53,458 nt of DNA, taken from contig NC_068981.1 of NCBI RefSeq assembly GCF_001194135.2, positions 191,534,196-191,587,653 of the forward strand, read 5' to 3'. The DNA comes from Octopus bimaculoides (taxonomy: Eukaryota). The notes beneath the pieces are model-generated. The model was given only the letters and a program-made list of their open reading frames with translations. It had not been told where the DNA came from and ran no database searches. Numbering within the stretch: the stretch's first letter is position 1; each line of letters starts with the position of its first letter. Below, piece after piece: positions 463 to 28,060 of the stretch. A program made the position numbers and the translations under genes.

Positions 463-514
463 TGGTTCCCGTTGTCCATGTGGGGAATACTGCAACAACA
501 AAAGATTCACTCGA
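463..514 (+). CDS. SETD2: SETD2 exon (first in window): end of the AWS/pre-SET Zn cluster, (C)GSRCPCGEYCNNKRFTR
   Basis: ttttcAG|T...CGA|GTAAGT; phase 2 in, phase 0 out. The translation matches the AWS end (human CSSRCPNGDYCSNRRFQR, recalled). Upstream exons lie outside the window. Confidence 0.9.
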
Positions 515-3302: not shown

Positions 3303-3379
3303 CATCAATATGTAAATGTCACAACATTCCAGACAGAAAACAAAGGACTTGGATTAATGACTCTTGAAGATGTCCTGCC
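3303..3379 (+). CDS. SETD2: SETD2 exon: start of the SET domain, HQYVNVTTFQTENKGLGLMTLEDVLP
   Basis: ctttttAG|CAT...CC|GTAAGT; phase 0 in, phase 2 out. Contains the SET N-terminal KGxGL motif. Confidence 0.92.
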
Positions 3380-4913: not shown

Positions 4914-5115
4914 GCATACATTTGTCATGGAGTATGTTGGAGAAGTTCTTGACTATAAGCAGTTCAAGAATCGGACAAAGCAGTATGCTAAAAATGGCCA
5001 GGAGCATTATTATTTCATGTCCCTGAACGCTGATGAAGTGATTGATGCCACATACAGAGGAAATAAATCTCGTTTTATTAATCATAGCTGTGATCCAAAT
5101 TGTGAAACTCAAAAG
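4914..5115 (+). CDS. SETD2: SETD2 exon: SET core, HTFVMEYVGEV...DATYRGNKSRFINHSCDPNCETQK
   Basis: ttttgtAG|G...AAG|GTGAGT. EYVGEV and RFINHSCxPN are diagnostic SET motifs (ORF track 4894..5127). Confidence 0.97.
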
Positions 5116-5680: not shown

Positions 5681-5772
5681 TGGACAGTAAATGGAATGCT
5701 GCGAATTGGATTTTTCACCAAAAAGTATATTAGTGCTGGGCAGGAGATGACATTTGATTATCAGTTTGAAAG
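5681..5772 (+). CDS. SETD2: SETD2 exon: SET C-terminus, WTVNGMLRIGFFTKKYISAGQEMTFDYQFE(x)
   Basis: tttcttTAG|TGG...GAAAG|GTAAAT. ExTFDY motif. An in-frame TAA at 5774-5776 forces use of this donor. Confidence 0.95.
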
Positions 5773-6065
5773 GTAAATCTGATATCTAGGTGTATTATTT
5801 CATTCCTTTGTTACACTACTTAACAAGAGAGTTAACCTGACATATGATGGAGCTAAAGCTTTGATATTAAGCTAGTACTTTTTATCCATTAAAGTCAACT
5901 GTGTGATTCAGTTTTATTATTTAATCAAATATTTTACAGTATTATTAAATAACAATATCTTTTGACATAAGATCCGGCTAATGATGCCCTATTCCGTTGT
6001 ATTTAATATTCTTTATTAAATTTAAAAAAATACTTTTTTAAAGTTCATGAATAATAGAACAAGTA

Positions 6066-6240
6066 GAAAGATATATTTTTCAACACATAAATACTGAACA
6101 GTATAGTGTTAAATACTGAACAGTATATATATAAATACTGTATAAATACTGAATAAATAAACAGTATAAATACTGAACAGTATATAAAGGATAAAATCCT
6201 TTATATACTGTTCAGTATTTACTTGTTGAAAAAATCTTTC
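6066..6240. repeat. Foldback inverted repeat with internal 18-bp tandem units and a perfect 25-bp hairpin
   Basis: 6167-6191 TAAATACTGAACAGTATATAAAGGA is the exact reverse complement of 6197-6221, with a TAAAA loop. Outer arms GAAAGAT..TTTTTCAAC / GTTGAAAAAATCTTTC. Confidence 0.9.
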
Positions 6241-6381
6241 AACTTTCTTTGTTGTAATCATGGTTCACATAAATGACCACATCTTGTTAGTTTAACATTG
6301 ACTTAGATCTTTTCTTTTTAAATTCCAAATATATGAATAGTTAGAAAAGTTTTTCAGTGGCATTTTGTATTATTTGTGTAG

Positions 6382-6517
6382 CAAACAAGCACAAAAATGT
6401 CACTGTGGCTCAAGTTGTTGTCGAGGAACAATAGGTGGTAAGAAAAAGTCTACAGTGAAATCCAAGAAGAAAAGTGTTTCCTCAGAAAAGAAAAAGAAAG
6501 AGTTTGAAGATGAATCT
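6382..6517 (+). CDS. SETD2: SETD2 exon: post-SET, KQAQKCHCGSSCCRGTIGGKKK...EFEDES
   Basis: tttgtgTAG|C AAA...TCT|GTGAGT. CxCxxxxC post-SET motif followed by a basic tract. An in-frame alternative acceptor lies at 6358. Confidence 0.9.
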
Positions 6518-10704: not shown

Positions 10705-10836
10705 TTGGAAGAAGAAATGGAACGAATGTCCCAGTTAGAAGGATTAAAGAATAAAGAACATGTACTTAACCTGTGCAGGTTAATGGTTAGAGCAGAAAGT
10801 AATGACCATCGATTGTCCATATTGCGCATATTGCAG
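10705..10836 (+). CDS. SETD2: SETD2 exon: LEEEMERMSQLEGLKNKEHVLNLCRLMVRAESNDHRLSILRILQ
   Basis: gtttttAG|TTG...CAG|GTAGGT; 132 nt, phase 0/0. Matches human GLSDKNQVLSLSRLMVR (recalled). Confidence 0.92.
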
Positions 10837-11802
10837 GTAGGTGAATCAGACTTTAAACCTTGTCACAAAAACCAGTCTCACTAAACCCATCACTTTGTTT
10901 CCACTAAAAATGGATGTATTTTATATATTGTACAACACTCCATCACCATCTTCATTTAATGTCCACTTTTCCATGCTTGCATGGATTTGATGAAACTCAT
11001 TGAAGCAAATTTTCTACTGTTGGATGTTCTTGTCATGAAACTTCACCTGTTCCTAGCAAGGTAATATTTTCCCTAGTCCTTTGAACATGAACAATAGCAA
11101 GTCATGTTTCATGGAATATTGCAGACAAATAACACCATTTTTCCAAGGTGTAGATGGTTCTATGACCAGTAGTTTTGTTTATAGTGTACAAATATCAAGA
11201 CCCTGGGACACAAATGCAGACATAGACAAGCATGCATGCATTCGCACACACACACACACACACACACCTAGCTTTTTGGTTTCCATTTTACATACTCTCT
11301 CATAAGGCATTGGTCAACTCCTGGCTATAGTAGAAGACAGTTACCCTAGCTGCAATACAGTGGTATTGAACACAGAGCCATGTGGCTGTAAAGCAAGCCT
11401 CTTGGCCACACAGCCTTCCCTTATGTCAGTTGTTGCTGCTACAAAATAATTATGAAGTAAAATTGATTCTATTGGGTTGTCTGGAAAGTTTGTACCGATT
11501 TTTAAAGGAAAGAAAAAGGTCAATAAATACTTGCCATTACATTTTTAATCAACCAAATATGAACCATTTTGTTGCACAATGTGTCTCCATCTTTCCTTTA
11601 ACTTGAAAATACCCTCTTCCCAGAATTGAGGTGGTTTCATGGCAAATAAGTCGAAAGGTAAGCTACTATAAATCGGCATGAACTTTCCAGACAACCCAAT
11701 ACCATGATACCATGTTTTCTGAATTTTAATCTATAAATAATCTGTCTGTCTTTCATTTTGATCTGTTTCATTCTGCTTTTTTTTTTCCTTTTTCATTCTT
11801 AG

Positions 11803-11913
11803 GGCACAAATGAGCAGGCTTGTTTGCGTCTATTCTTGGACTATCATGGCCTACCTTTACTGTGGAGCTGGATGGCTGATATTGGTGATGGGGCTCCCTA
11901 TTTAAAATTACAG
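11803..11913 (+). CDS. SETD2: SETD2 exon: GTNEQACLRLFLDYHGLPLLWSWMADIGDGAPYLKLQ
   Basis: Long pyrimidine tract, then AG|GGC...CAG|GTATTA; 111 nt. HGLxLLWxWM motif of the Set2 helical autoinhibitory region. Confidence 0.95.
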
Positions 11914-12015
11914 GTATTATTTGCTGTTTATAGCTATAAATATATTTTTATATTACATGTAATGGGTTCTAATAAGCATTGCAATAATATGAAACTCTTT
12001 TTATTTCTTTTGTAG

Positions 12016-12732
12016 ATCTTGGACACTTTGAAGATGCTTCCCATAACTAACAAGACAATTCTGCAAGAAAGTAAAATTTTACCTATGGTTATAAAATGGG
12101 CTACTGAACTTAAATTGACGGCAGATCCCGAAATTGAAACAGAACAAAGCAATGATAATTCGTCACAAGCTGGTACTCCTTCATCAGTGGCAAGTCGAGA
12201 TGAACGACCACCGAAGAAGAAGGTTAAATTTGCTGACGAAACTAGTTCGGACAGTGAAATGTCAGAGTGTAGCCGGTTGAGCGGCATGATATATGTCAAT
12301 GAACCTACAACTAAAAATGGACTGAATGAAGTTGCCGACAGCTCTGATATGACATATACAGATTATTCTACCCCAGGAGGAAATTTGTACATAGACGATT
12401 TAGATGAAACCAGATCTTCTAAATCTCCTTCTAGTGGAGTGCCTAAAAGTGGAATTCTTATTAAACCAGAACTGCAAAAAGAGTTATCAAGTGAATCTTC
12501 CTCTTCACCTGTAGTTGACGACAAAATCCAGTCTAATGAAGCTGAATCTTCCTCTCCAGATATACTTGAGAAATCAACGAAAGAAAAGTCAGAAGACGAT
12601 ACTTTAACAAAAGACGATGACAGCAGCAATGAGGTCAAGGTAGCAGCGGACGAGAAGAACTTTGATTCAAGCAAGTTGTCATCAGTGGTTTCTCTCGCCA
12701 CTGACCTACTCAAGCACTGGAGTGATTTGAAG
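12016..12732 (+). CDS. SETD2: SETD2 exon: ILDTLKMLPITNKTILQESKILPMVIKWA...ATDLLKHWSDLK
   Basis: ttttgTAG|ATC...AAG|GTAACA; 717 nt, phase 0/0 (ORF track 12019..12756). Conserved ends flank a Ser/acidic linker. Confidence 0.95.
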
Positions 12733-14290
12733 GTAACACTTTTAGTAAACATTTAAAATAACTTGTTTTAATGTTACATCACAGATATGTTTGTATGGAG
12801 AAATAGGCATGGCTGTATGGTTAAAAAGTTTGCTTCCTGACTATATGGTTTTGGTTTCAGTCCAGCAGCAGAGTACATTGGGCAAGTGTCTTCTACCACA
12901 ACCTTGGGCCAATCAAAGCTTTGTCTGAAACTGAAAGAAGCCTATTGTGTATAGTTGTGTGTGTGCAAGTGCACACACATGCACCTGTATATGTGTGTGT
13001 TGACAATTGCACTCTATAAAAGTTGCAGACTGTGAGCAATTTTGTTGTTAGGTCTTTCAACAAATTGTCCACTCACTTCATTCCCATGAAGATGTATGAA
13101 ACAGGAGATCCTTTATTTGAAAAACAGATAAAGGTTGGCAACAGGAAGATAGTCAGCCAAAAGGATATTGATTTAACCCATGAAATGGGTAAAATAGAGA
13201 TAGAAACAAACGAAGTGCAGTGGCTAAAATGTACTAAGTAAACAGATTATTCTTATGAAAAAAACTCAAGGTGATGAGCTGGAGGAATTGTTAGCATATT
13301 AAACAAACTGTTTGGCAGCCTTTCTTCTTCCTCTTTGTATTCTATGTTCAGATGCTGCCATGGTCAACTTTGCTTTTCATCCCCTTGAGATCGATAAAAG
13401 AAGTACTAGTTCAGCAGTGGGGTTGGTGTAATTGACTACCCTTCCTCTGAAATTTCAGGCCTTATGCCTATAGTAGAAAGAATTATTAATAATAAATGTA
13501 TTGTGTGTGTGTGTGTGAATATCTGTAATCTATAAATGAACTTGTATGTATAGGAAATCCATCCTGTAACATTCTGAACGAAGTTCATGAATTCAACTAT
13601 ACTCCGTTACTTGTGCTATTAACTTCTACATCAAGCTAACAAAAGAGCATCTTTAGGTGCTTAATTTGCTAAAGAATAGCAGCTGAGTTCCCTTGAAACC
13701 ACACCTTGCAAGTTTAAAATAGAAAGGACACATTAAATAATGTAGCCCTAGATACATTGAATTGAAAATAAAATGGGGCTAATCATTGCAGGGTTACTTT
13801 GATCAGGGCCAACCTTGACCAAACAGACTTCTGTATCATCACTTCACAATTTATGCCCCATGCTGATAAAACAACTTATGCATTTTCTTTATATGTGCAT
13901 AATGTTTGGAACTGAATGCAACTTGTTTTTGAAAAGCAACAATTATTTTTACTAATTAGGTGTAGGAGAGTAGTTTGCTTATTTAGTCACTGGACTTAGG
14001 TTAGTAAGTCAAATGTGTTTGTACACATATACATAGTTGTGTGTGTGTTGAATTATTTTTGAAGCTGAAAATATTTATTCAGGGGTTTGAGTTTTGTATT
14101 TAACACTTTATAGCATTTGAAATGTGGTGCACACAAGGCTCAAGGCTTTGAGTCACACCTGCAGTGTTCCCAGTTTCAAAAAGAATAAAAGCATTGAAAC
14201 TCTATGTGTTTTGAACTATTTTTTCTGTTGTAAACCCATACACACCCACACAAAAATACTTAATGTATTTCTTTTTTTTGTTTTTAACAG

Positions 14291-14354
14291 GAAGTTTTCA
14301 AAATTCCAAAGAAAGAAAAGGTTGAAGAGCGGAAAAGAACAGAAAGAGAATTAG
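14291..14354 (+). CDS. SETD2: SETD2 exon: EVFKIPKKEKVEERKRTERELE (GC donor)
   Basis: tttaacAG|GAA...TTAG|GCAAGT. Matches human LKEVYRIPKK (recalled). Phase 1 out fits the next exon. Confidence 0.88.
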
Positions 14355-14611
14355 GCAAGTTTATAACTTTTAATTGTAATTAAACTGATTGCTTCTCAAC
14401 AAATATTCAGCTTCTTTATTTTCTATTTTAAATACACATATCTTTTGTATTCAAAACTGTAATTGTTTTTCCTTCCTTCAAACAAGTAAATTGTTATTAT
14501 ATATATATATATATATATACATATAGAAGCTATATTTCCTAAGTTATGTTTAAGATTGAGTGTGGAGTTAGTTTTTGCATTGCTTTATCATATTTTTATA
14601 TTTTTTTACAG

Positions 14612-14729
14612 AAAGAGATCGTAAGCGTAGATATGAGGCATCACCTGATAAAAATCATAATCGTTTTAGAACACGCTCAGATCGAAGGCGGGATGATGTT
14701 CAAGAATTGCTCAATCCCAATAGGCCTAG
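14612..14729 (+). CDS. SETD2: SETD2 exon: RDRKRRYEASPDKNHNRFRTRSDRRRDDVQELLNPNRPR
   Basis: ttttacAG|AA...CCTAG|GTATTT; phase 1 in, phase 2 out; Arg/Asp-rich. Confidence 0.8.
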
Positions 14730-14834
14730 GTATTTTGTTTTATTTCATGTATTCAATTTAATGTCATTTGTAGAGTGAGCCTTTAAATCTGGGATGGGTG
14801 TCAAATTGTGAAATTTAATTCACAGGGAATTTAT

Positions 14835-15060
14835 TTCAGTAATAATCATCTAATTTTGGCTCAAGGCCAGCAATTTTGTGGGGAGCTACAGATCTATTAC
14901 ATTGACTGCAGTACTTTACTGATACTTTATTTTATCAGCCCCAAAAACATAAATGCTAAGTTTATCTTCATGGATTTTGAACTCAAAATGTTGACAGCCA
15001 GAAGAAATGCTGCTAGGCATTTTGTCCAATGCATTACTGATTCTGCCAGCTCACCACTTT
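14835..15060 (-). mobile_element. tRNA-derived SINE family 2 (antisense); further copies at ~13270-13480(+), 19270-19370(+), 36510-36910, 37685-37875, 38340-38930, 41750-41940, 48985-49070(+), 51125-51315
   Basis: GAATTTGAACTC (reverse-complement B box) and GCTAA..ATTCTGCCAGCTC (reverse-complement A-box region), with shared ATCGACCCCAGT...CTGGTACTT...ACCCCGAAAGGATGAAAGGCAAAGT body. Confidence 0.7.
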
Positions 15061-16303
15061 ATATAATAGTAATAATAATAATAATACTTTCCACTATAGG
15101 CATAAGGCCTGAAATTTGGGTAAGTGGGACTAGCTTATTATATTGACTCCCAACACCTAACAATGATAACAAATGATGTGCATGGTACATGGGATAAAAC
15201 ACAAGCCAGAAAAGTGAATCGTAAAAGAGCCATAAAGATGAAAGAATGCCTAAGGCAAATTATAGATTAAATAATCACAGAACTTGGAATAAAACCATCA
15301 GCTATTGCAAAGAAATAATGAATTATATTTTCAGGAACAAAAAAATATTAATAATAAGAAAAAACATCAAACATGCCTATAGGAAATACCAGTTTGTTTT
15401 GAAATACTTCAAATCAAAATATGATGTGAGGCAAAGAATTATTGTGTATATTGCAAACAACTCTTATAATTAATTTTAGTTGAAATATTAAATCTCAATA
15501 CTATTGCAATATAGTTTTTAAAATATTTTGTTTTTGTGAAGTAATTATATCTGTTTATTGGCAATAATCTATAGATGAAATTAATGAATCTGGGAAATAC
15601 GAATTTTATCTTCTATTGCTGAGTATAAGCTTAAGTGTGGCTGTGCCGTTAACAAGCTTCCCACCCATGTGGTTTCAGGTTCAGTCCCAGTCTATAGCAA
15701 TTGTCTTCTACTATAGCACCACAGTGGGTGTAGTGCTAGTCAATTTATTTGTTATCTCCTGCTTCATGTTTAAGTCACTTTAGCCATTGGCTTACCTATC
15801 CTTGAACTGACACTAGTTCAGTTCCAACCCCTTAAATGGATATTGTAGAGGTAAAAGTAGTTCATTGCTACTAGCAGCAAAGACAAAGCAGACATAATGT
15901 TTTGTTAATGTTTAACCCTTATTTCCAATGCACCCATAGCCAGAAAAAAAGGCAATGGGAAATCTATTCAATGTGTTTCTACCTATAGAATCTTCACATC
16001 TAGATAGTTCTTCAATGGATCACCGAATAATTCATTGAGTTACAATGTTAATGTCTTTCTTTAATATAGTTAGATGTTGAAGCTACATATTAAAGAACAC
16101 ATACACATGTGCTTGATTAATTCTAATACTATTATAATATTGTTAATATCAATATGAATAGTTATGATGTCTTTCTAGTATTATTTATCTCAAATGTATG
16201 TATTGTTTGTTTTTATGTTTTATATATGCCTTGTTTCTTTCATGCAATTCATTTAAGTGTTATATTTTGCATTTTACATATATAGAATTTATGGTTTCAA
16301 CAG

Positions 16304-17079
16304 GCGTGTTCTGCTACCTACACCGCCCAAGCTGAGCAAAGAAGAACGGCGCCAACAGTTTGAGGCCCAAGTAAGAGCAGAAGATGAACGTGCAGAATTT
16401 CAAAAGCAACAAGAAGCAGCTTACATTCAACAACAACAAGAATATATGCAACAATACAATATTTCCGGTGAAGGCAATGGCTATGATTACTATGCACAGC
16501 ATGACCCAAATATTGCTTACCAACAAGATCCAAACATGGTTTACCAGCATGATCCGAATGTAGCATATACACAAGATCCTTCAGCAGTGGTAGCTTACCA
16601 AGCAGACCCAGTGACTGGAATGTTTCCAACTCCTGCTACATACCAACAAGATCCAAATGCTCAGTATCAAGACCCCAACAGTGTTTACCATCTATCCAAT
16701 TATCTCATACCACCCCCTACAGATCCAGCTGCCTATGCAGTGTCAACAGCTGATCCAGCTGTATACCCAGTACCACCCCCAACAGATCCTAATGCTTATC
16801 AAATACACCCAACTGACCCAACTGCTTATCAAATACAACCACCTGATGCAAATGCTTATACTGTAACCCCTACGGACCCAAATGCATACCAGGTCCCTGC
16901 ACCTGAACAAACGACTTTCCAAACCACCACAGAACAGACTAGTTATCAGACTGAAAGTAGCAACTATCAGATATCTGTTCCACCACCTGTTACACCTGTA
17001 CCTACTGAGCCTAGTTATCCAAAACCAAGTGTAGCAGTAACAGCTGCTACTTCACCAGCAGTTACTCAACAACCAGCAG
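16304..17079 (+). CDS. SETD2: SETD2 exon: KLSKEERRQQFEAQV coiled segment followed by Y/Q/DPN repeats
   Basis: caacAG|G CGT...GCAG|GTAAGA (ORF track 16257..17243). KLSxEERRxxFE is conserved in SETD2. An alternative in-frame acceptor lies at 16286. Confidence 0.9.
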
Positions 17080-17146
17080 GTAAGAAAATATGTACACTTG
17101 CAAATACTCACACAAACACACACACACATGCATATTCACATATGTA

Positions 17147-18072
17147 CACAGATATGACAGAAGTAAATAGACACCCTTATAATCAAAATTTATTTAAATC
17201 TGAAATTATACATTTAAATTATTTATTAATTCTTATAATGTGAATACTTAGTATTCACATTATAATGCCCTTTGCATTTTTCAATGCAAGGACCCTATTA
17301 GGCATGCTACTGATCAGATGATGAATATTCTCTTGTGGAATTTCTTGCCAAGTTGCTTTCTTGTTCTTTTTATGAAGTGTCCTGTCCATTATGTCCCAGA
17401 GGTGTTCAATAGTGTTCATATCTGGTGACTGGCTTGGCCATGGAAGCTTNNNNNNNNNNGGTGTTCAATAGTGTTCATATCTGGTGACTGGCTTGGCCAT
17501 GGAAGCTTTTTAACGCCATTCTCATCCAACAAATCTTGGGTCATTTTAGCCGTGAGGCAAGGAGCCCCCTCTTCCATAAATGACGTGTCTTTAATCATTT
17601 CACCTCTGGAGAAGATTGGAAGGAGTCCTTTCTGCAATATGGACACATATTTATCTGAGTTTGTTTCCCTCACTCTCCACCAGTTCTGATCAATCATTGA
17701 TCCCCAGACCATCACAGAGTAGCTGCTGTGTTGCATTGTTGGCTGCAATCTTTTCACACCAAATTCTTGATCACAGAGTCTTCAGACCCACAATCGACCA
17801 CTGTTAGGAAATACAGCAAATCTGGACTTATTAGAGACTATGACAGTGTCCAAAAATGCTAGTGGCCTCTCCACCATCTCACTGGCCCAATCTTTTCTGG
17901 GACTGACATCAACTTGTTCTGCTTCTTTTGTACATGGCAAGATTAAACAGTCACATATAGAACCTGAAACATAAAAATGTCCATTAATAAAAAATATAGA
18001 CCTTTACATGTTAGAATAAACATAAAATAACGATGTTTTATAGGGTGTCTATTTATTTCTGCCACGTCTGTG
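17147..18072 (-). mobile_element. Internally deleted Tc1/mariner (DD34E-type) DNA transposon remnant
   Basis: ~31-bp TIRs: CACAGATATGACAGAAGTAAATAGACACCCT versus reverse complement CACAGACGTGGCAGAAATAAATAGACACCCT. TA on both flanks. Minus ORF 17416..17757 has VMVWG, FMEEGAPC and WPSQSPDMNTIEH. Confidence 0.9.
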
Positions 18073-19829
18073 TACATATTCTTCAGCCAATTCTCAAAAT
18101 GTCACATTGCATTTATGTTCGTATCTAATGCTGTTGATTTCTTTTCCTCATTAAAACACTTTGTGTCTGTCACTGGACATATTAGAAAATGAAAACTTAC
18201 ATGATATGACAAACACACGCTCAAGTATCACAATATCATAAAGGTGTATGTATTTAGTAGTTTCACCTTTTACATAAAACATCACTGTAAAAAGAACAGC
18301 AACTGTAATTTTATATTATAATCTAATATATTGGGGTAGCCATGTAACTCTTCTACAGCAAGACACCTGTTTTTCTGCTACAAAGCCACTTTCCCCTATA
18401 CTACCCTACCCTCCCATAAGATGTGGAGGGGATTTTGTCTTTGGTGCTCACTAATGCCAGTCCCATGTAGAAAACATCCAGTACATTCTGAAAAATGATT
18501 AGCATTAGGAAGGGCTTCTAGCCATAGAAATCATGCCAAAGTGGACAGTGGAGTTTGGCACAGTCTTTGCTCATGGACTCCAGCATGGAAAAATGGTCAT
18601 TGAATGGTGATGATGGTAAGAGCAGTCGTGTCTTCTTAAAATCACACACAACTGTCTTAAAGAAGGGAAGACACATTTAGAAAGATACAAAAAAAAAAAG
18701 GAGAGAGAAAATGACAGAGAAAAGTGATCACAATTGAAATGCTTTGGTCTTATGTCTGCTGGATCAAAGTTAAACTGGGGTTAAAAGGTGACAATATGTA
18801 ACTAGGCCTCACTGAAAGAAAATGATCTATATTGTAGATGTGTTGCAGTGGAGATTACCAATTATCACAGCATATTATCAATCTGTAAAGCTACTATGCA
18901 ATTACTTTTCTCCATTTTAACTTCCTTGCATCCAACAATGAAACATCTGACCTGGCCTGATTACAACTAGTTTTTAACTGGTTTAACTAAATTTAAAAGA
19001 AACAAAAATCCATCTTTAAAAGCCATATCAGCAGTGAGTTGACCAAATCATTAGACAATCTATATGCCAACATAGAAAGCGGACATTAAATGATGACAGT
19101 GGAGATTATTATTATTATTATTATTATTGCTACTGCTGTTGTTGAAATATTGTAAAGGATGCACCAGAGCATCTGTTTCAATTCTTTGTGTCTTAAGTTC
19201 AAATTCCACCAGATATAACTTTTTTAATCCATTTTTTTGGAGTTAATAAAAATAAAATCAGTCTAAGGTAGTGAATATAGTAATAAGAATGTCAGACGAG
19301 ATGGCTTGCAGTATTTTCTTCCAGGCCTTTGCATTCTGAGTTCAAATCCTGTCATGGCCTACTTGGGTGGTAGACTACACCTGTCACCCAGTTTCACTCC
19401 ACTATCTGACACCTTTAGTGTCTTTACTGGAATTCTTTCTGTCACAAGCATCCAGACTGGGTTTCAATTTTGAAGATAGCTTCTTCCTTCCCTCCCACTG
19501 GCGTCAAAGGCCCTGCATAAAGTCATGGTCACTGCCCTTCTGCCACCATCATCAGAGGACTGTTTTGTGCTCCGCTATCTACTTTGGTTGGATTTCTATG
19601 GCAGGATGCCCTTCTTAATGCCAACCACTTTAGAGAGTGTGTTGGGTAGACTTTTTCTCTTTTTTGTGGCACCAGCACTTGTGAGGTTGCCAATTCAGCT
19701 TGCAAGACAAGACTCTTCAGCTGAGTCTTGGTGTAGTGTTGAGAGTGGTGGCTTTGTGCCAGGTGTTGAGATACTAAATTATGATGGTTACCCTCTGCAC
19801 ATGGAGAAGATTAAAAGTGTGTGTGTGTC

Positions 19830-20110
19830 ATCATCATCATCATCATCATTTAATGTTCATTTCCCATGCTGGCATGGGTTGGACAGTTTGATAGGAGCTG
19901 TCCAGACTCCATTTGTCTGCTTTGGCATGGTTTCTACAGCTTGATGCCCTTCCTAATGCCAACCACTTCACAGAGTGTGCTGGATGCTTTTTATGTGCCA
20001 TCAGCACAGATGCACTTATGCAGCAATGGCACAAGTGCATTTTATGTGGCACTTGCACCTGCAAAACAGAGACCTCTCAGCTGGGAGAGGGAGTGGCAGC
20101 ATGGCTATCA
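19830..20110 (-). mobile_element. RTE LINE 3' end (antisense)
   Basis: (CAT)n-TTTAATGTTCATTTCCCATGCTGGCATGGGTTGGAC...GATGCCCTTCCTAATGCCAACCAC. Confidence 0.75.
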
Positions 20111-20354
20111 AGGACATGCCTGTGTGTGTATATATATTATAAACACTTTTTCTTTCTAGAATTTAAATACTGAATCCTTTGTTGAACTTTTGTTTTTTAA
20201 TTTAATTGTATTAAGATAGTATATAGTGTCTACATTATTTTACAGTATAAGCTACACTCTATAAATGAAATAAACGGATAACTTTGATGTTAAATACACA
20301 TATATTTATAATTTTTAAATAAAATATTGAAATATTGTTAAATTTCAATTGCAG

Positions 20355-20524
20355 AAGCTCTTTCAGAACATTGCTTTATGCCAGCACCAAGTGTACCAGT
20401 TGTACTTGAAACAGGCACCTCTCAGACAACACCTAATCATAGTGTTTTACCAACAATGACACCAACATATATAGAACCTGGGAGCTCTGTACCTACTTTG
20501 TATTCTAATACACCTGCTTTTTCT
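20355..20524 (+). CDS. SETD2: SETD2 exon: Pro/Thr/Ser-rich linker, (E)ALSEHCFMPAPSVPVV...TPAFS
   Basis: ttgcAG|AA...TCT|GTAAGT. Phases 1/0 bridge the neighbouring exons. Low complexity, so support comes mostly from splice signals and phase. Confidence 0.75.
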
Positions 20525-21370
20525 GTAAGTTTATATCCTAAATTTCCTGTTCTTATTATTTATAGTTTTTATTCTTTTAGTACTATGCTGATAAATGTTT
20601 ACTTCTTCACAATTAATAAATTGTCTTTTTCTTCTACGTTGCAACAATACAAATGTTATATAAGCAAACAGAATTTATTGAATGAAAGTATTATGCTGGA
20701 AAGACTTCATGTTAAGTATCATGTCTGGTTTCCATGTCTAAAGTAATGTAATTGGGCTTTTAACAAAGAAAATTATGATATCCATTTATGCTTTACTTAA
20801 TTAATTCCAGAGAAACTTGCGTTGTTTTATAGTAAACTTTCCAGATTAAAGGAAATTTGGGTTTTGCAGTTTTGTTGTTGCGAATTTTCTGTAGAATTGA
20901 AGTTGGGTTTACTGTAAATATGAAACATGTATTCTATAATGAGTAGAGCTGCAGGCTGGCTCTATAATTAAGAAGTTTGTTTCCCAACCACATTGGTTCA
21001 GTTTCTATGTCACTCCATGGCACCTTCGGCAAGTGTCTTTTAATACAGTCTAGAGCTAATCAAAACCTTGTGAGAGGATTTTGTTGATGGAAACTGAAAG
21101 AAGCCTGTTGTGCATGTGTTTGTGTCCTTTCTGGTAATTGTAAATTAGTATCCCTGTTAGAGTGTCCTTCATTTCCAATCTTCTATGAAAGCATGTCTGT
21201 TTATGGGGAAATATTACCACCTTGGTTGGCAACAGAAAGGGCATCAGGCTGTAGAAAATCTGCCTCAATAAACACCAGCTGCCCCATGCCAGCATGAGAA
21301 AGTGGATGTTAAAATGACATTGATAACATTGATGATAATACATTGTTGAATTATTTCCATTAGCATAAAC

Positions 21371-22166
21371 CAGTGGTTCTCAACTGGGGTATATATGATC
21401 TCTGGATCTCCATGTGACCTGGGTGTCCACTTAAGAAAAATAGCAAATTGGGTCCACATCATCATCATCATCGTTTAATGTATGTTTTCCATGCTGGACA
21501 GTTTTCTGTGTTGGATGGTTTGACTGAGGTCTGGAGAGCCAGTGGCTGTACCAGGCTTCAATCTGATTTGGCAATGTTTCTACAGCTGTATGCCCTTCTT
21601 AACACCAACCACTCCGAGAGTGTAGTGGGTGCTTTTTACATGCCACTGGCACAAGAACCAGTCAGTGGGTACTGGCATCAGCCACGATTGGTTAGTGCTT
21701 TTTACGTGCCACCAGCACAGGAGCTGGTTGGGTGGACGTGGTATCAACCACATTCAAATGGTGCTTTTTACATGCCATCGGCCACGTTTGGTTGGTGCTT
21801 TTTTATGTGCCACCTTCACGGGGGCCAGTCAGGTGGACCTGGCATCGACCACATTCGGATGGTGCTTTTTATGTGCCACCGGCACGGGAACCAGTCGGGT
21901 CACTGGCCACTGCTAGGATATTGGTTTTACTTGACAGGGTCAATGATTTTAAGGGCTATAGATGTATTTATTGTAAGAAACATTAAGTTTCTTTCTCTAA
22001 CGTTTTACGGCGTCCAAACTGTGCAAGTGAATATGTAAATAGCAAAATAGGAATTTTGGAAGAAGTGTCTATAAAATTGTTTTTACACATCAAATGCCTA
22101 TGGGGTCCACCAGAATAAAATAGTAATCAAAGGGATCCATAGATAAAAAATAGTTAAGAACTGTTG
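21371..22166. mobile_element. hAT/Charlie-type MITE, copy 1, interrupted by an antisense RTE 3' end (~21457-21908)
   Basis: Left TIR CAGTGGTTCTCAAC; degenerate right TIR TAGTTAAGAACTGTTG; 8-bp flanks GCATAAAC/GTCTAAAC. The body matches 39945-40295. Confidence 0.75.
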
Positions 22167-22262
22167 GTCTAAACACAGCTACCCATCATAATTAGATCAT
22201 GATTATCTGATTGTCTTTCTACTAAAACAAATACCTAATATACATCTTTTCTTTCTCTTCAG

Positions 22263-22631
22263 GTTCAATCGAAGTACATGACTACACCTCAAGCAAGTCA
22301 AACGACATCCTACCCACAGACAACACCTCCTCAATCCAGCACACTACCTCAGCTACCCCCTCAGCCTCCGCAGCTGCCTGCAACTTCTCTTGTTAATGTC
22401 CCTCCTCCGACTCCATCATCAACTCCGCAGACACCATTATTTGTACAAGGCCAACAAGGCCAGCCTCAACAACAGCCACCAGCAGCACCTCCTCAGGTTT
22501 TCTATCCTCCAACACCACAAGCACTGGTTGTACCTCCTCCACAACATTTCTCTCAGCCCCAGGCCTCAACTCCAGCCGTTGCTAGCTCACAAGTTGTACA
22601 AATTAACCAAGGATTATTTGCTTGTCAACAG
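22263..22631 (+). CDS. SETD2: SETD2 exon: Gln/Pro-rich linker, VQSKYMTTPQASQ...GLFACQQ
   Basis: ctttctcttcAG|GTT...CAG|GTAAAT; 369 nt, phase 0/0 (ORF track 22278..22661). Confidence 0.85.
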
Positions 22632-23059
22632 GTAAATTGCTTTAGATTACATTGTGGTTAGGAAGACAATATTGTAATTACCTATTAGTTTTTTTTTTTA
22701 TTTATCTGAACAGCTGCAAACATGGTTGTGTGGTTTGTGCAAAGTTCACTTTGCAACCATGCAGTTTCAGGTTCAGTCCCACTGCATAGCTCCTTGGGTG
22801 TGTGTCTTCTACTGTGGCCCTTGGCCAATTGGTGCTTTTTGAGTGGAGGCTCAGCATATGTATATTTCAGTTTGTTTGCATCCCTGTGACTTAATGGCTC
22901 TGCAAATAGAGACCAGTTAAATAAGTATCAGACTTAAAGATAGGCATGGGGGTTGATTTGATCAGGTAAAACCCATCAAGGTTGTGTGCCCTAGTATGGT
23001 CTTAGTTCAATGACTGAAACAAATGTTCAAAATTTTGCTAATGCTATACCTTTGCTGGC

Positions 23060-23240
23060 GCCACATAAAAAACACCCAGTACACTCTAAAGTGACTGACA
23101 TTAAGAAGGGCATCCATCTGTAGGGTCTATGTCAAAACAGACAATTGGAGCCTGATGCAACCCTTCATCTGGCCAGCTCCTGTCAAACCATCCAACCCAT
23201 GCCAGCATGGAAAAGGACTTGAAATAATAATGATGATGAT
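23060..23240 (+). mobile_element. RTE LINE 3' end
   Basis: AAGAAGGGCATCCATCTGTAG...CCATCCAACCCATGCCAGCATGGAAA...GATGATGATG. Confidence 0.7.
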
Positions 23241-23349
23241 GCTTTCATTTAGTCAACAGATTGTAAACAGTGACATTTTGATATTTTAAACGTGAATTTC
23301 TAAATTCTCACCACTTTGTTTAACATCAATTCGAACTGTCCGCTTCCAG

Positions 23350-23540
23350 GTTGACCAATTACAGCAGTTACAAATGCAAAACATTGTTTTACCGTCAACA
23401 ACTTCAACTAATGCAGCAACCGACGATGAACCTCCTCCACCACCCTCACCTCCAAAGCCAAAAGTTACCAAGCTTCCAGCCAATTGGAAGATAGCTAAAG
23501 ATGCAGAAGGAAAACAGTATTATTATCATACTCTAACAAG
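23350..23540 (+). CDS. SETD2: SETD2 exon: N-part of the WW domain, ...PPPPSPPKPKVTKLPANWKIAKDAEGKQYYYHTLTR
   Basis: cttccAG|GTT...AAG|GTGAAT. LPxNW...G+xYYYH is the WW signature. Confidence 0.95.
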
Positions 23541-23744
23541 GTGAATTGATTTAAAATTGCTCTTTTTAACATGTTTGCCTTTCCTCTTTCTAAATTATTC
23601 AGTTTTAGTGGTAACATATGTTGCAAAATGTCAGCAAATTACCATATATATTTCCTCATTAACTAAACTGATGTAAATAATGTTGACACAGCTTATTTTG
23701 GTGGTAATTCTAGAATAATGTTGTCCTATGTGTCTTGGTCTTTG

Positions 23745-23947
23745 ATTTTAAACGGCCATATCTGGACTAAATATTCCACCCACTTAATGTTCAAACTGGC
23801 CCACTCTGACCCCTCACACCTACTGTACAATGTCATTCTAAAAATAAACAATCATATCTTCAGAATCTTGAAGCTACAAGATAATGCATGATTAATTCAA
23901 AACAATGTGAATAAGTAAGCATTACTCTAACAGAATAATCTGAGTTA
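23745..23947. mobile_element. Non-autonomous DNA element; second copy ~46122-46562, interrupted by an RTE 3' end at ~46233-46497
   Basis: Shared TCAAACTGGC...CTCACA...CTAAAAATAAACA...AAGATAATGCATGAT|TAATTCAAAAC...GAATAAATAAG.ATTAC. The second copy ends AAAAGGGTTGA (piggyBac-like end). Confidence 0.6.
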
Positions 23948-24311
23948 ATATGGTTTCAAGGAGAATTGGCTGCTATTTCTAGCAGCTCTACATTGTGGAG
24001 ACTAATGGAAACAGGTGGTGTAAAAACAGAAATCCAAATTTAACCTTGTTTGTTCAATTTTTTTAATATATTTTTGTTTATATTTCCATATCCCTCAATA
24101 GAAAATTTATTCAGTTTTAATAAAGAAACCAAAAATGAAAGAAAAAAATTTAGAGCAGTAATCCTAGTTTTATGATTTAGTTTCTGTGGCCATAAATATA
24201 TATACTATATTAACAAACTGTATTTTATTACCATGTAATGGGCTTGTTTAGTTACTGTCATCATTATCTTTTCACTGACAGACATGTTCCTTGCTTGGCA
24301 TAAGGTTAGAT

Positions 24312-24933
24312 CAGTGGTTCTCAGCCAGGGTCCACATAAAATTCTGTGCAATAAATTGGTTATACTTCTAAAAATATTTAAATTTTCGTTTGCAATTCCT
24401 AATATTTAATTATAAAAATACAGTAAGATTTTTTTTATATAGGCACAGGAGTGACTGTGTGGTAAGAAGCTTGCATCCCAACCACATGGTTCTGGGCTCA
24501 CTTCCGCTGCATGGCCCCTTGGACAAGTGTCTTCTTATTATAGCCTTAGGCCAACCAAAGCCTTTTGAGTGGATCTGGTAGACGGAAACTGAAAACAGCC
24601 CGGTGTGTGTATGTATGTATATATATATATATGTGTGTGTGTCTGTGCTTGTTGCCCCACCATCGCTTGAGAACCGATGTTGAAGTGTTTACGTCCCCGT
24701 AACATAGCGGTTCGGCAAAAAAAATAAAACAATAGAATAAGTACTAGGCTTACAACGAATGAGACCTGGGGTTGATTTGTTTGACTAAAGGTGGTGCTCC
24801 AGCATGGCCACAGTCAAATGACTGAAACAAGTAAAAAAAAAATAATAGAATATACATCAAATGGTTATGGAGGTCCAGCAGGTTAAATAGGGATAAAAGG
24901 GGTCCAGTGGTAAAAAATGGTTGAGAACCACTG
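24312..24933. mobile_element. hAT/Charlie-type MITE, copy 2, with a nested SINE
   Basis: TIRs CAGTGGTTCTCA.C / GTTGAGAACCACTG; 8-bp TSD GGTTAGAT/GGTTAGAG. Confidence 0.85.
24441..24850 (+). mobile_element. Near full-length tRNA-derived SINE family 1; truncated heads at ~5400, 12805, 15635, 20950, 22720
   Basis: A-box-like GTGACTGTGTGG and B-box-like GG.TCA.TTCC (GGTTCAGTCCC in other copies), central (TA/TG)n, and an A-rich tail after ACTGAAACAAGT. Confidence 0.8.
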
Positions 24934-25013
24934 GGTTAGAGACTGTTGTAATACAATAATTATTGAAGCATATTTCTGACTGGGATTTTTTTAAATAACT
25001 TTTTCTTTCTCAG

Positions 25014-25104
25014 GCAAACACAGTGGGATCTCCCAAAATGGGACCAAAGTGATCAAGATGATATGGATCTGGGAACTCCAACTCACGATGAACCACAAAA
25101 CAAG
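25014..25104 (+). CDS. SETD2: SETD2 exon: end of the WW domain, QTQWDLPKWDQSDQDDMDLGTPTHDEPQNK
   Basis: tttctcAG|G CAA...AAG|GTATAT. TQWxxP completes the WW domain. Confidence 0.93.
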
Positions 25105-25208
25105 GTATATAAATAAACTTCATTCAATTCAGTTCTATATTTGAGAGATGAGGAATTATGTACATTATTTACATTTGACGGATATTTGTCCTCATCTTGT
25201 TTGTTGTT

Positions 25209-25255
25209 AACACAACATTTCTGCTGATGTACTCTCCAGCCTTCATCAGGTGTCC
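25209..25255 (-). ncRNA. Minimal type I hammerhead ribozyme-like motif (antisense arm)
   Basis: Minus strand GGACAC-CUGAUGA-A-GGCUG-gagaguacau-CAGCA-GAA-AUGU-U-GUGUU: core boxes, stem II, a near-palindromic mini stem III, and stem I GACAC/GUGUU. Confidence 0.7.
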
Positions 25256-25425
25256 TGGGGGAATTTCAAACCTGGGTTCTCATTCCTAAGGTATTTTTCC
25301 GATGTTGTTGTTGTTGTTATTATTATTATTCAGGTCACTGGCTGGAATCGAACTTGGAATTTTGTGGTTAGTAGCCTGTGCTTTTAGCCACAAGATTCTG
25401 AGTTCAATTCCAGGCAGTGACCTGA

Positions 25426-25464
<39 letters not shown>

Positions 25465-25512
25465 TCAGGGAAAATACCTTAGGAATGAGAACCCAGGTTT
25501 GAAATTCCCCCA

Positions 25513-25556
25513 AGACACCTGATGAAGGCTGGAGGGTATATCAGCCGAAACGTGTT
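25513..25556 (+). ncRNA. Minimal type I hammerhead ribozyme-like motif (sense arm, cleavage site apparently damaged)
   Basis: AGACAC-CUGAUGA-A-GGCUG-gaggguauau-CAGCC-GAA-ACGU-GUU. It is 3 nt shorter than the antisense arm after ACGU, putting G at position 17. Confidence 0.65.
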
Positions 25557-26234
25557 AACAACAAACAAGATGAGGACAAATATCCATCAAATGTAAATAA
25601 TGGTCATTCAATTTCTCTCTCTCTGCCTATGACTTGTTACAGGGTCTCTAAAACTGGTAGGAGGTGGGAGGAAGTATCCTCATATCTACTCTGGCTTGGT
25701 TTGGTTCTATGGTTTGATGTCATTCCTAATGCCAACCATTTTACAGTGTGTACTGGGTGTTTGGTTTTTTTTTTCATAGCACCAATACTATTGAGGGAGT
25801 GTGAATGAAGAATGGTGGGAGGGACAACTGGTTCTTGTAGAGGAGCTGCAAAGAAATAAATAGGTGAGGTATGGTGGGGGTGTCCAAGTGGCCCCAACTG
25901 AAGGTGAGAGGTGAGTAGAAATGGGAGTTTGTATGGGGAGCAGGGGGTGAGAAGCCAAAAGTNNNNNNNNNNTGCTATTTACATTTTTGTTCTTTGATTA
26001 ATTCTGGACTTAAATGTGAAAGTAACAGCTGTAAATATTGGATGGGATTGAAGGGTGGTGGTTGGAGTGGTTGATGGCTGATGAGTTGGCAAAGGTAGAG
26101 GATGCAGAAAAGAATGGGTTGGGGGAGATGATATGTGGTTGGGAAGGAGGGTAGTGAATGATGAGATAATTTAGTTAGTGAGAATTAATCAATGTAATTA
26201 GTGGGTGGAAAGAACAATATTAGAATGACTGACA

Positions 26235-26590
26235 AGTAAAATGGTACAAAAGATGAGTGAGGTTTAGCATTTTGAGGTCAGTCTTCACCACTTTATCCCA
26301 TGTCTTGTGCTCCCTTGTCCACAAGTTCAGTTGGCACTTCTGTATACTGCTGTCCTCATTCATAGATCCCATCCATATATATATATATATATCATCATCA
26401 TTGTTTCCATGCTGGCATGGGTTGGATGGTTTGACTGATGTCTGGAAAACCAGCAACTGTATCAGGCTCCAACCTGATCTGGCAAGGTTTTTACAGCTGG
26501 ATGCCCTTCCTAATGCCAACCACTCCAAAAGTATAGTAGGTGCTTTTTACGTGCCACTTGCACGGGAGCCAGTCAGGGGGCACAGGCATT
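26235..26590 (-). mobile_element. RTE LINE fragments (RT C-terminal piece plus 3' end)
   Basis: The minus frame reads ...KTWDKVVKTDLKMLNLT (ORF track 26220..26528), followed by the family 3' core. Confidence 0.7.
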
Positions 26591-27473
26591 GAATATATAT
26601 GAGAGAGAAAAAGAGAGATCTCACCTCTCCTTTGTTGTATCTTCTGTTATCTAACAATGCTATTTACATTTTTGTTCTTTGATTAATTCTGGACTTAAAT
26701 GTGAAATTGATGTTATTATTCTAAAGCAAGTTTAAGAATAACAGAACATTTACTGATGGTGGGTGTTGACTCAAAACTGAGAATAGAATCAAATTCATGT
26801 TGACTAGGACTTGCTCTCTCAAACCTGAGCCCTTGTATCTAACTACCCTCCACCTAGGGTCTTGAGCAAAAAATAAATAAATAGTTGCATACACAGCTCA
26901 AGAGTAACGATTGCAGGCAAACTAATAGGCAAGATTTAAAAAAAATTCAAGGGAACAACAATAATAAGCCTATCTCTCAACTACCATGTTTGTTCAACTG
27001 AATTGCTACTTTCCTCATCACTTTCACCAGTTTGATTGTCCAAAACACTCTCATTGCTGGTATAAGTGTAAACTCTTTGTCCAAAGAATAAATAATTTCC
27101 TCAACTCCAAACAGTCTAGGCTTTGCTTGTTTACAAGACAAAGCCCCGGGTTTATCATATGGTCATTTCATCACATTTTTTTTCCTTTTTTACAATTAAA
27201 AACAAAAGTAAACAACAGCTTTGGGGTACATTATTAGCCGTGAGTCCTAAACACTTGATTACAAAGCTGCAATGTGGTCAGGTGTCCAATTTTAATATTT
27301 TATCTTTCTATGTGTGTCATTCATTACCACTTTACCAAGAATCCAATAGAGATGACATTAAGACTATGACAGGGTTAAATTTCACTTGAGTTTATTCAAC
27401 TAGTTGACTCTGTATTTTCTGTTCTGTCAATACATTTTAATGTAGTGGATAGACTTCTGATTTATTTTTTCAG

Positions 27474-27557
27474 TCTAAAAGAAAAGCCACGACTACAGCA
27501 GCAGCTGATACTTCCAGTGAACTTGCCAAAAGAAGCAAGGAAGCATTCCGCAATAAG
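27474..27557 (+). CDS. SETD2: SETD2 exon: SKRKATTTAAADTSSELAKRSKEAFRNK (start of SRI)
   Basis: ttttttcAG|TCT...AAG|GTAAGT. ADTSSELAK is highly conserved. Confidence 0.95.
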
Positions 27558-27697
27558 GTAAGTTGCATCTCTATTTGAATTCTGCTATTATCTGTCCTGA
27601 TTTAGAAACTGAAGATGAATTTATTTTTTAAATATGTGGAAATTTTAATTGTCTTTTTCACATATTTTTTGATTTTTCTCTTTTTTTCTAATCACAG

Positions 27698-27799
27698 ATG
27701 TCCCAATGGATTGTTGCCTGCTTGAATCCCTATCGGAAACCAGATTGTAGACTCGGTCGAATATCTAGCACAGATGACTTCAAGCATTTGGCAAGAAAG
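27698..27799 (+). CDS. SETD2: SETD2 exon: SRI domain, MSQWIVACLNPYRKPDCRLGRISSTDDFKHLARK
   Basis: atcacAG|ATG...AAG|GTATAC; 102 nt. LNPYRKPDC and DFKHLARK are SRI motifs. Confidence 0.96.
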
Positions 27800-28021
27800 G
27801 TATACATTGTTATTATCTCTAAACCCCCCCCCCNNNNNNNNNNNNNNNNNNNNNNNNNNNNNNNNNNNNNNNNNNNNNNNNNNNNNNNNNNNNNNNNNNN
27901 NNNNNNNNNNNNNNNNNNNNNNNNNNNNNNNNNNNNNNNNNNNNNNNNNNNNNNNNNNNNNNNNNNNNNNNNNNNNNNNNNNNNNNNNNNNNNNNNNNNN
28001 NNNNNNNNNNNNNNNNNNNNN

Positions 28022-28060
<39 letters not shown>

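What the first reader, a model, noticed from the sequence alone, without database searches (positions are those of the whole stretch)
5761..6400. The conserved post-SET loop R-Y-G is missing from the spliceable SETD2 sequence
Seen: the exon ends ...GAT TAT CAG TTT GAA AG|gtaaat with an in-frame TAA right after. The next exon starts |C AAA CAA GCA CAA AAA TGT, giving FDYQFE-S-KQAQKC. I found no AG-NTAYGG-GT microexon in the 609-nt intron. The only in-frame alternative acceptor (6358) gives FE-SGILYYLCS-KQAQ. Established (recalled): Set2 orthologues have FDYxxxRYG-x-x-AQKC (human FDYQFQRYGKEAQKC), and this loop, including R1670, gates the H3K36 channel. The preceding exons sum exactly to my recalled human lengths (52+77=129; 202=124+78), whereas this exon is 92 versus 98. 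Inference: a real 2-residue shortening that alters autoinhibition or product specificity, an unconventional 6-nt microexon, or an assembly defect.
Basis: partly seen in the sequence, partly recalled or inferred. Interest (0 to 1): 0.7.

Follow-up and report, generated by a model that had tools for sequence, protein, structure and literature searches.

The report
Cephalopod SETD2 lacks two gate-loop residues
This cephalopod's SETD2 histone methyltransferase gene really is six bases short at the end of one exon, which removes a conserved Tyr-Gly pair from the loop that gates the active site; a cuttlefish has the same shortened loop, so it looks like an inherited lineage trait and not an assembly error, and its effect on the enzyme is untested.

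Summary
The exon at 5681-5772 (92 nt) ends GAA AG|GTAAAT and the next exon starts at 6382 (C AAA CAA...). The spliced product is FDYQFE-S-KQAQKC, two residues shorter than human FDYQFQ-RYG-KEAQKC. The 609-nt intron has no TAYGG or TTYGG and no credible in-frame microexon.

The gene is an intact SETD2 orthologue: SET, WW and SRI domains all score above Pfam cut-offs.

The closest relative found, cuttlefish (Acanthosepion pharaonis) SETD2, is 89-90% identical here. It has the same FDYQFE-S-KQAQKC with different neighbouring residues, which argues against an artefact of this assembly.

In limpet and mussel genomic DNA the homologous exon is 98 nt, ending GAA ACT TAT GG|GTAWGT, with the intron at the same place and phase. 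One 6-bp deletion, GAAA[CTTATG]GGTA, turns Thr-Tyr-Gly into Ser and keeps the donor.

Among 382 homologues, 340 have an 11-residue spacer. Nine residues occur only in the cuttlefish protein and one divergent short protein.

The missing residues correspond to human Y1671 and G1672, part of the wall of the H3 G33-G34 tunnel; Ser replaces the R1670 plug. All other catalytic residues are kept, and AlphaFold models the short loop confidently.

The functional consequence is inference only. No transcript spanning the junction could be retrieved.

The parts
463..514 (+). SETD2 exon, end of the AWS region (..GSRCPCGEYCNNKRFTR), 52 nt
   Evidence: tblastn with human and cuttlefish SETD2. Splice sites read.
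3303..3379 (+). SETD2 exon, start of the SET domain (HQYVNVTTFQTENKGLGLMTLEDVLP), 77 nt
   Evidence: AG/GT flanks.
4914..5115 (+). SETD2 exon, SET core including the NHSC motif, 202 nt
   Evidence: It is 97% identical to cuttlefish.
5681..5772 (+). SETD2 exon encoding WTVNG...FDYQFE plus AG. It is 92 nt, 6 nt shorter than the 98-nt homologous exon of Lottia and Mytilus. The inferred 6-bp deletion lies at about 5771/5772.
5773..6381 (+). Intron of 609 nt in phase 2, with donor GTAAAT. It holds no microexon able to restore aromatic-Gly. It contains an AT-rich inverted-repeat (MITE-like) element at about 6076-6233.
6358..6381 (+). 24 nt that would be added by the alternative in-frame acceptor (tttttcag|). 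This would insert GILYYLCS into the loop. Its use is unknown.
   Evidence: The cuttlefish model uses the short form.
6382..6517 (+). [quoted passage not shown] 136 nt.
10705..28866 (+). Remaining SETD2 exons through the WW domain (23455-23541, 25012-25107) and the SRI domain (27695-27805 approx., 28702-28863) to the stop codon
   Evidence: tblastn. Pfam WW and SRI are above cut-off.

Best explanation
The window carries the 3' two-thirds of a functional cephalopod SETD2 (Set2) gene. In the cephalopod lineage a single 6-bp genomic deletion removed CTTATG from the last eight bases of the exon that ends the SET domain: ancestral GAA ACT TAT GG|GT became GAA AG|GT. The splice donor and the reading frame were kept. 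Thr-Tyr-Gly collapsed to one Ser, whose codon AG|C spans the intron.

The mature protein therefore has a SET-to-post-SET linker (the LIN, or autoinhibitory, loop) two residues shorter than in nearly all other Set2/NSD/ASH1 enzymes. It lacks the equivalents of human Y1671 and G1672, and has Ser where human has the R1670 plug.

Inferred, not shown: the enzyme is still an H3K36 methyltransferase, because every other catalytic, cofactor and zinc-binding residue is conserved. It would have a tauter loop and a G33-G34 tunnel missing one aromatic wall. That would most likely weaken loop-mediated autoinhibition and somewhat relax or retune substrate gripping, not abolish activity.
For: Shown:
- The exon and intron anatomy and the open frame.
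- Domains: SET, WW and SRI are above Pfam cut-offs. Exon-by-exon similarity to cuttlefish SETD2 runs to the stop codon.
- Cuttlefish: P0121 (SETD2, Acanthosepion pharaonis) has FDYQFESKQAQKCYCGAECC against FDYQFESKQAQKCHCGSSCC here. The loop is the same and the neighbours differ.
- Outgroups: Lottia and Mytilus genomic loci have the same acceptor (cag|TGG ACA GT), a 98-nt exon ending GAA ACT TAT GG|GTAWGT, the same intron phase and similar intron sizes of 562 and 639 nt. One deletion reproduces the window sequence, including the GTAA start of the intron.
- Rarity: the spacer is 11 residues in 340 of 382 homologues, and 9 only in the cuttlefish plus one divergent protein.
- Conserved sites: the equivalents of human Y1579, F1589, Y1604, F1606, M1607, NHSC, E1636/T1637, F1664, Y1666, F1668 and the CxCx4C motif are all conserved. 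I mapped these by counting along the alignment to human SETD2 PDB chains.
- Structure: the AlphaFold2 model has mean pLDDT 90, with 92-94 across the loop blocks. It superposes on human SETD2 structures at TM 0.80 and rmsd 2.1 A.

From the literature (PMC4973290): R1670 plugs the K36 pocket in the closed state. Y1671, F1668, Y1604 and the main chain of Q1669-G1672 line the G33-G34 tunnel. Y1671A keeps 30-60% activity. ASH1L has Ser and NSD1 has Cys at the plug position.
Against: No transcript or read spanning the 5772|6382 junction could be retrieved. The cuttlefish RNA-seq contigs L001-L010 all begin downstream of it, so the splice pattern rests on gene structure and one gene model.

Only one other cephalopod could be examined, and only as a predicted protein. 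Its genomic DNA was not on record.

An in-frame alternative acceptor exists at 6358.

All functional statements are inference from human structures. The AlphaFold confidence says only that the fold tolerates the short loop, nothing about activity.
Confidence: 0.8

Rival explanations
1. The mature mRNA does contain the missing aromatic-Gly codons. They would be supplied by an unannotated microexon or an unconventional splice that gene models in both species miss.
For: Six-nucleotide microexons are routinely missed by gene predictors. No junction-spanning transcript was available here.
Against: The 609-nt intron has no TAYGG or TTYGG at all. The only two AG-6nt-GY candidates encode S-Q-L and S-I-V. 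None of the 17 in-frame AG-(3n)-GY candidates gives aromatic-Gly. Shifting the donor downstream runs straight into TAA. The single-deletion model already explains the sequence.
Confidence: 0.04
2. Assembly or sequencing error: the true genome has the 98-nt exon and 6 bases were lost in this draft assembly.
For: The window comes from a gapped draft assembly, with five N runs.
Against: The cuttlefish orthologue from an independent assembly encodes the identical shortened loop. The nearest N gap is more than 11 kb away. The local sequence is not a homopolymer or simple repeat. The loss is exactly in frame and preserves the donor.
Confidence: 0.03
3. The main isoform uses the upstream in-frame acceptor at 6358. 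The loop would then be longer (FE-SGILYYLCS-KQAQKC), not shorter, or both isoforms would coexist as a regulated switch.
For: tttttcag| at 6350-6357 is a canonical acceptor 24 nt upstream and is in frame without stops.
Against: The cuttlefish model uses the short form. The inserted peptide resembles nothing in 382 homologues; loops longer than 11 residues are rare, and most apparent 13-residue cases are motif mis-registration. The pyrimidine run before 6358 is only 6 nt, preceded by a purine-rich stretch. The 24 nt themselves are T-rich, as expected of the polypyrimidine tract of the 6382 acceptor.
Confidence: 0.08
4. The locus is a decaying or catalytically dead SETD2 copy, and the loop loss is one symptom of that.
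For: The deletion removes residues that contact substrate in human SETD2 (PMC4973290).
Against: All exons from AWS to the stop are open, with canonical splice sites. The SET region is 89-97% identical to cuttlefish. Catalytic and zinc residues are intact. SET, WW and SRI score above cut-off. The cuttlefish orthologue is transcribed in at least 10 RNA-seq runs.
Confidence: 0.03

Closest known systems
Human SETD2 / yeast Set2 (KMT3A), H3K36 trimethyltransferase
   Same: The architecture is the same: AWS-SET-post-SET, then WW and SRI domains. The catalytic domain is 61% identical in the Foldseek structural alignments. The fold is the same (TM 0.80). Catalytic and zinc-binding residues are conserved.
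   Different: The LIN loop is 9 residues between FDY and CxC, not 11. The equivalents of Y1671 and G1672 are absent, and Ser replaces the R1670 plug.
SETD2 of other molluscs (Lottia gigantea, Mytilus galloprovincialis; Elysia chlorotica and related transcripts)
   Same: The exon start, intron position and phase are the same, and so is the FE prefix of the loop. There is already no Arg at the plug position (T or H).
   Different: These species keep Tyr-Gly. Lottia and Mytilus have the 98-nt exon. Elysia-type sequences are one residue short, but downstream of Tyr-Gly (FEHYG-EAQKC).
ASH1L and NSD1/2/3 autoinhibitory loops
   Same: A small residue sits at the plug position: Ser2259 in ASH1L and a Cys in NSD1 (PMC4973290). 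The cephalopod Ser resembles ASH1L in that single respect.
   Different: ASH1L and NSD enzymes keep the full-length loop with a hydrophobic residue plus Gly after the plug (x-L-G in the homologues). They are paralogues without the SRI domain.

Membership tests
SETD2/Set2 (KMT3A) orthologue | SET domain of the Set2/NSD/ASH1 type, preceded by AWS | tested here: met
   Pfam SET scores 86.8 bits against a cut-off of 22.4. The best PDB sequence hits are human SETD2 at E=2.6e-69. Only the last 17 residues of AWS lie inside the window. The cuttlefish orthologue carries PF17907 AWS.
SETD2/Set2 (KMT3A) orthologue | Post-SET zinc motif CxCx4C plus the NHSC cysteine | tested here: met
   NHSC and C147-H-C149-GSSC-C154 align to the corresponding cysteines of human SETD2 in PDB chains. 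Human residue numbers C1631/C1678/C1680/C1685 are from PMC9814698.
SETD2/Set2 (KMT3A) orthologue | C-terminal WW and SRI (Set2-Rpb1 interacting) domains | tested here: met
   Pfam WW scores 44.9 bits and SRI scores 100.3 bits on translated window exons.
SETD2/Set2 (KMT3A) orthologue | Conserved (not strictly defining) 11-residue LIN loop with aromatic-Gly after the plug residue | tested here: not met
   The spacer is 9 residues and there is no Tyr/Phe-Gly. In 340 of 382 homologues the spacer is 11 residues, and 313 of those 340 have YG or FG.
SETD2/Set2 (KMT3A) orthologue | H3K36 (tri)methyltransferase activity | not testable with these tools
   This needs an enzyme assay or an H3K36me3 measurement. 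The one cephalopod epigenetics paper found did not blot H3K36me3 (PMC9476566).
Microexon-containing gene (6-nt microexon) | An AG-flanked and GT-flanked in-frame 6-nt segment in the intron that encodes the missing residues | tested here: not met
   no RTAYGG, TAYGG or TTYGG was found, and the two 6-nt candidates encode unrelated residues.

The most novel reading that the evidence does not exclude
The shortened LIN loop is an adaptive, cephalopod-wide re-engineering of the SETD2 gate. By losing the Y1671-equivalent tunnel wall and the Arg/Thr plug, the enzyme would have constitutively relieved autoinhibition and a wider substrate tunnel, for example tolerance of residues other than Gly at H3 position 34, or a broader range of non-histone substrates. 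The loop might be tuned further after transcription, by use of the 6358 acceptor or by A-to-I editing of the junction codon AGC (Ser) to GGC (Gly) at A5771. None of this is excluded by the data. The one indirect test run, RNA folding around the site, gave no support (z = -0.15).
Probability: 0.12. Interest if true: 0.55.

Novelty: new variant of a known kind. Interest (0 to 1): 0.33.

Why it matters
The LIN loop of SETD2 does two jobs in the human enzyme. It plugs the lysine channel when no substrate is bound, and it forms one wall of the glycine-only tunnel. That tunnel explains why H3 G34 oncohistone mutations block H3K36 methylation in cis.

A natural orthologue shared by two distant cephalopods that deletes Tyr-Gly from this wall is a ready-made experiment on how much of the loop is needed. 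It shows whether loop length matters for activity, product state and G34 sensitivity.

It is also a clean example of an out-of-codon-phase 6-bp deletion at an exon end that preserves the splice donor.

It is a modest, lineage-specific sequence variant, not a new system. Its value depends on biochemical follow-up.

Tried and rejected
1. Transcript evidence. Three homologous-protein searches were run with queries of 186, 1426 and 561 aa. That tool appears to list only proteins of about 0.56-1.75 times the query length, so the three were chosen to cover roughly 104-2495 aa. The only cephalopod entries were the cuttlefish gene model P0121 and the C-terminal transcript product P0268. The ten P0268 RNA-seq contigs all start at the exon junction FEDES|LEEEMERM, 135 nt downstream of the site.

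2. Independent genomic copies. Look-ups of window ORFs (66, 240 and 245 aa) and of P0121 found nothing on record.

3. Metagenome scans. Degenerate DNA patterns for the spliced junction and for the genomic exon end gave 0 hits in metagenome contigs.

4. Microexon scans of the intron gave nothing plausible.

5. Donor-slide origin. I considered an upstream cryptic donor being activated, with the old 6 nt now intronic. I rejected it. The intron starts GTAAAT, which matches the Mytilus donor GTAAGT, not NTAYGG. No second donor follows at +6.

6. An RNA structure that could support editing at the junction codon: not significant, z = -0.15.

7. Literature on cephalopod SETD2 or H3K36me3: nothing specific was found.

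8. I did not determine the species of the window. It is a cephalopod 89-90% identical to Acanthosepion pharaonis in the SET region, and an octopod origin was not verified.

Full report
**What is in the sequence**

The + strand of the window carries a multi-exon gene. tblastn with a recalled human SETD2 sequence, and later with the cuttlefish orthologue, lays out exons from the end of the AWS region (463-514) to a stop codon near 28866. These run through the SET domain (3303-3379, 4914-5115, 5681-5772), the post-SET motif (6382-6517), a WW domain (about 23455-25107) and an SRI domain (27695-28863). Translated pieces score above Pfam's curated cut-offs for SET (86.8 bits), WW (44.9) and SRI (100.3). 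Eight consecutive exons splice with canonical AG/GT boundaries into one open frame.

The finding's coordinates are exact:
- The 92-nt exon at 5681-5772 ends ...TTT GAT TAT CAG TTT GAA AG.
- It is followed by GTAAAT, with an in-frame TAA on read-through.
- The next exon starts at 6382, so the intron is 609 nt.
- An in-frame alternative acceptor lies at 6358.

**Is the Arg-Tyr-Gly really missing?**

Yes. The spliced product is FDYQFE-S-KQAQKCHCG. phmmer against PDB chains aligns it to human SETD2 with a two-residue gap: fe..skqaqkc against fqrygkeaqkc.

The intron contains no RTAYGG, TAYGG or TTYGG. The only two AG-6nt-GY segments would encode S-Q-L and S-I-V. None of the 17 in-frame AG-(3n)-GY segments restores an aromatic-Gly pair or has convincing splice signals. 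Moving the donor downstream hits the TAA at once.

**How unusual is it?**

- The FDY-to-CxC spacer is 11 residues in 340 of them.
- Most apparent 13-residue cases are motif mis-registrations of the same 11.
- The spacer is 10 residues in 11 proteins.
- It is 9 residues in only two: the cuttlefish SETD2 and one divergent 253-aa protein.
- Within the 11-residue loops, position 4 is Arg in 297 and positions 5-6 are YG in 295 or FG in 18.

**Artefact or inherited?**

The exhaustive representative search returned one close relative, P0121. It is 89% identical over the 186-aa query. The word-indexed search names it SETD2 of Acanthosepion pharaonis, a cuttlefish gene model on a 1.68-Mb contig.

Its sequence at the site is FDYQFESKQAQKCYCGAECCRGTIGG, against FDYQFESKQAQKCHCGSSCCRGTIGG here. 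The shortened loop is identical while neighbouring residues differ. Two independent assemblies of different species therefore agree.

The window does contain five N gaps, but the nearest is at 17450, more than 11 kb away. The local sequence is not repetitive.

**Origin of the change**

Many genomic-ORF hits from arthropods and other animals end ...FDYQFQRYG and then run into intron sequence. This shows that the intron after the second base of the Gly codon is ancient.

I fetched genomic loci for Lottia gigantea (L011) and Mytilus galloprovincialis (L012). In both, the homologous exon begins at the same acceptor (cag|TGG ACA GT) and is 98 nt long. It ends GAA ACT TAT GG|GTATGT in Lottia and GAA ACT TAT GG|GTAAGT in Mytilus. 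The next exon begins A CAA AAG... or T AAA GAG..., and the introns are 562 and 639 nt. The window has GAA AG|GTAAAT ... |C AAA CAA with a 609-nt intron.

Deleting the six bases CTTATG from GAAA[CTTATG]GGTAA reproduces the cephalopod sequence. It keeps the donor, and it fuses the first base of the Thr codon to the second base of the Gly codon to make the Ser codon AG|C.

A donor-slide alternative fits worse. The present intron start resembles the old donor, not the old exon end.

Other lophotrochozoans already lack Arg at the plug position:
- T in Lottia and Mytilus.
- H or F in Elysia-like sequences.
- Q in Capitella.
- V in one transcript.

All of them keep Tyr-Gly. Elysia-type gastropods are one residue short further downstream, so this loop's length is somewhat labile in molluscs.

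**What the missing residues do in the human enzyme (from the literature)**

Yang et al. 2016 (PMC4973290) call the SET-to-post-SET linker the LIN loop. Their main points are:
- In the closed state it inserts R1670 into the K36 pocket.
- On peptide binding it extends and pairs with the H3 main chain.
- The G33-G34 tunnel wall is made by Y1604, F1668 and Y1671, plus the main chain of Q1669-G1672.
- Y1671 also joins the hydrophobic cluster around V35.
- The F1668A and Y1671A mutants keep 30-60% activity.
- ASH1L S2259 and an NSD1 Cys superpose on R1670.

PMC9814698 restates the plug role of R1670.

Counting along the alignment, the window's protein conserves the equivalents of Y1579, F1589, Y1604, F1606, M1607, NHSC, E1636/T1637, F1664, Y1666, F1668 and the CxCx4C zinc motif. 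Only the R1670-Y1671-G1672 triplet is changed, to a single Ser.

**Structure prediction**

I ran AlphaFold2 on the 186-aa window protein with an 81-sequence alignment. Mean pLDDT is 90. The 10-residue blocks spanning the loop and post-SET score 92, 92 and 94.

Foldseek places the model on human SETD2 crystal structures at TM 0.80, rmsd about 2.1 A and 61% identity. This shows only that the fold accommodates the short loop. No coordinates were available to examine the tunnel geometry.

**Most likely mechanism**

- Shown: a real, in-frame 6-bp deletion shared by two cephalopods, in an otherwise intact and conserved SETD2. The cuttlefish gene is transcribed; ten RNA-seq runs carry its 3' contig.
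- Inferred: the enzyme stays active. Its LIN loop is tauter and lacks one aromatic tunnel wall and any bulky plug. Autoinhibition by the loop is therefore probably weaker and the grip on H3 G33-V35 altered.
- Not shown: any change in product specificity.

**Limits**

No cDNA or read spanning the junction could be retrieved. The cuttlefish contigs begin 135 nt downstream of it. Look-ups of window ORFs and of P0121 found nothing. Metagenome pattern scans were empty.

Use of the 6358 acceptor, and possible A-to-I recoding of the AGC codon, remain open. RNA folding around the site is unremarkable (z = -0.15). No paper on this feature in cephalopods was found.

**Verdict**

A microexon, an assembly defect and a dead gene are each unlikely. 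This is a new variant of a known enzyme, of moderate interest to SETD2 structural biologists and of limited general surprise.

Noticed in passing
window 6076-6233 (arms 6076-6105 / 6204-6233; inner hairpin 6167-6192 / 6196-6221): The intron holds an AT-rich element with nested inverted repeats (a 30-nt arm pair at 93% complementarity, and a 26-nt perfect hairpin). It also has four copies of TAAATACTGAACAGTATATA, and looks like a MITE or foldback insertion.
   Followed up: partly
L001-L010 position 1 (corresponds to window exon junction 6517|10705): All ten cuttlefish RNA-seq contigs encoding the SETD2 C-terminus start at exactly the same base, the exon boundary FEDES|LEEEMERM. This suggests either a graph break in the A-rich Lys-coding stretch or alternative splicing at this junction.
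   Followed up: no
window 1542-1991 (-), 21448-22038 (+), 43701-43960 (+): Three ORFs share a peptide motif (..CTRLQSDLA.FLQL.ALPN.NH.ES..GAFYMP..). This indicates copies of one interspersed repeat family in SETD2 introns and downstream of the gene.
   Followed up: no
window 17450-17459, 25963-25972, 27834-28021, 30380-30837, 43965-44809: Five runs of N (10 to 845 nt) show this is a gapped draft scaffold. One gap (27834-28021) lies in the intron between the two SRI-domain exons.
   Followed up: partly
window 6400-6423 (CHCGSSCCRG): Both cephalopods have a double Cys (SSCC / AECC) where human SETD2 has ANC and other molluscs have NC or KC before the RG of the post-SET zinc motif. One unrelated homologue with a normal RYG loop also has CC, so a link to the loop deletion is doubtful.
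   Followed up: partly
P0125, P0270, P0271, P0272 (Elysia chlorotica and similar transcripts): These mollusc SETD2 sequences have a 10-residue loop (FE[HF]YG-E[AP]QKC), one residue short downstream of Tyr-Gly. LIN-loop length has therefore changed more than once within molluscs.
   Followed up: partly
window 6350-6381: An in-frame alternative acceptor lies 24 nt upstream of the annotated-type acceptor. It would insert GILYYLCS into the gate loop, and its use is unknown.
   Followed up: partly
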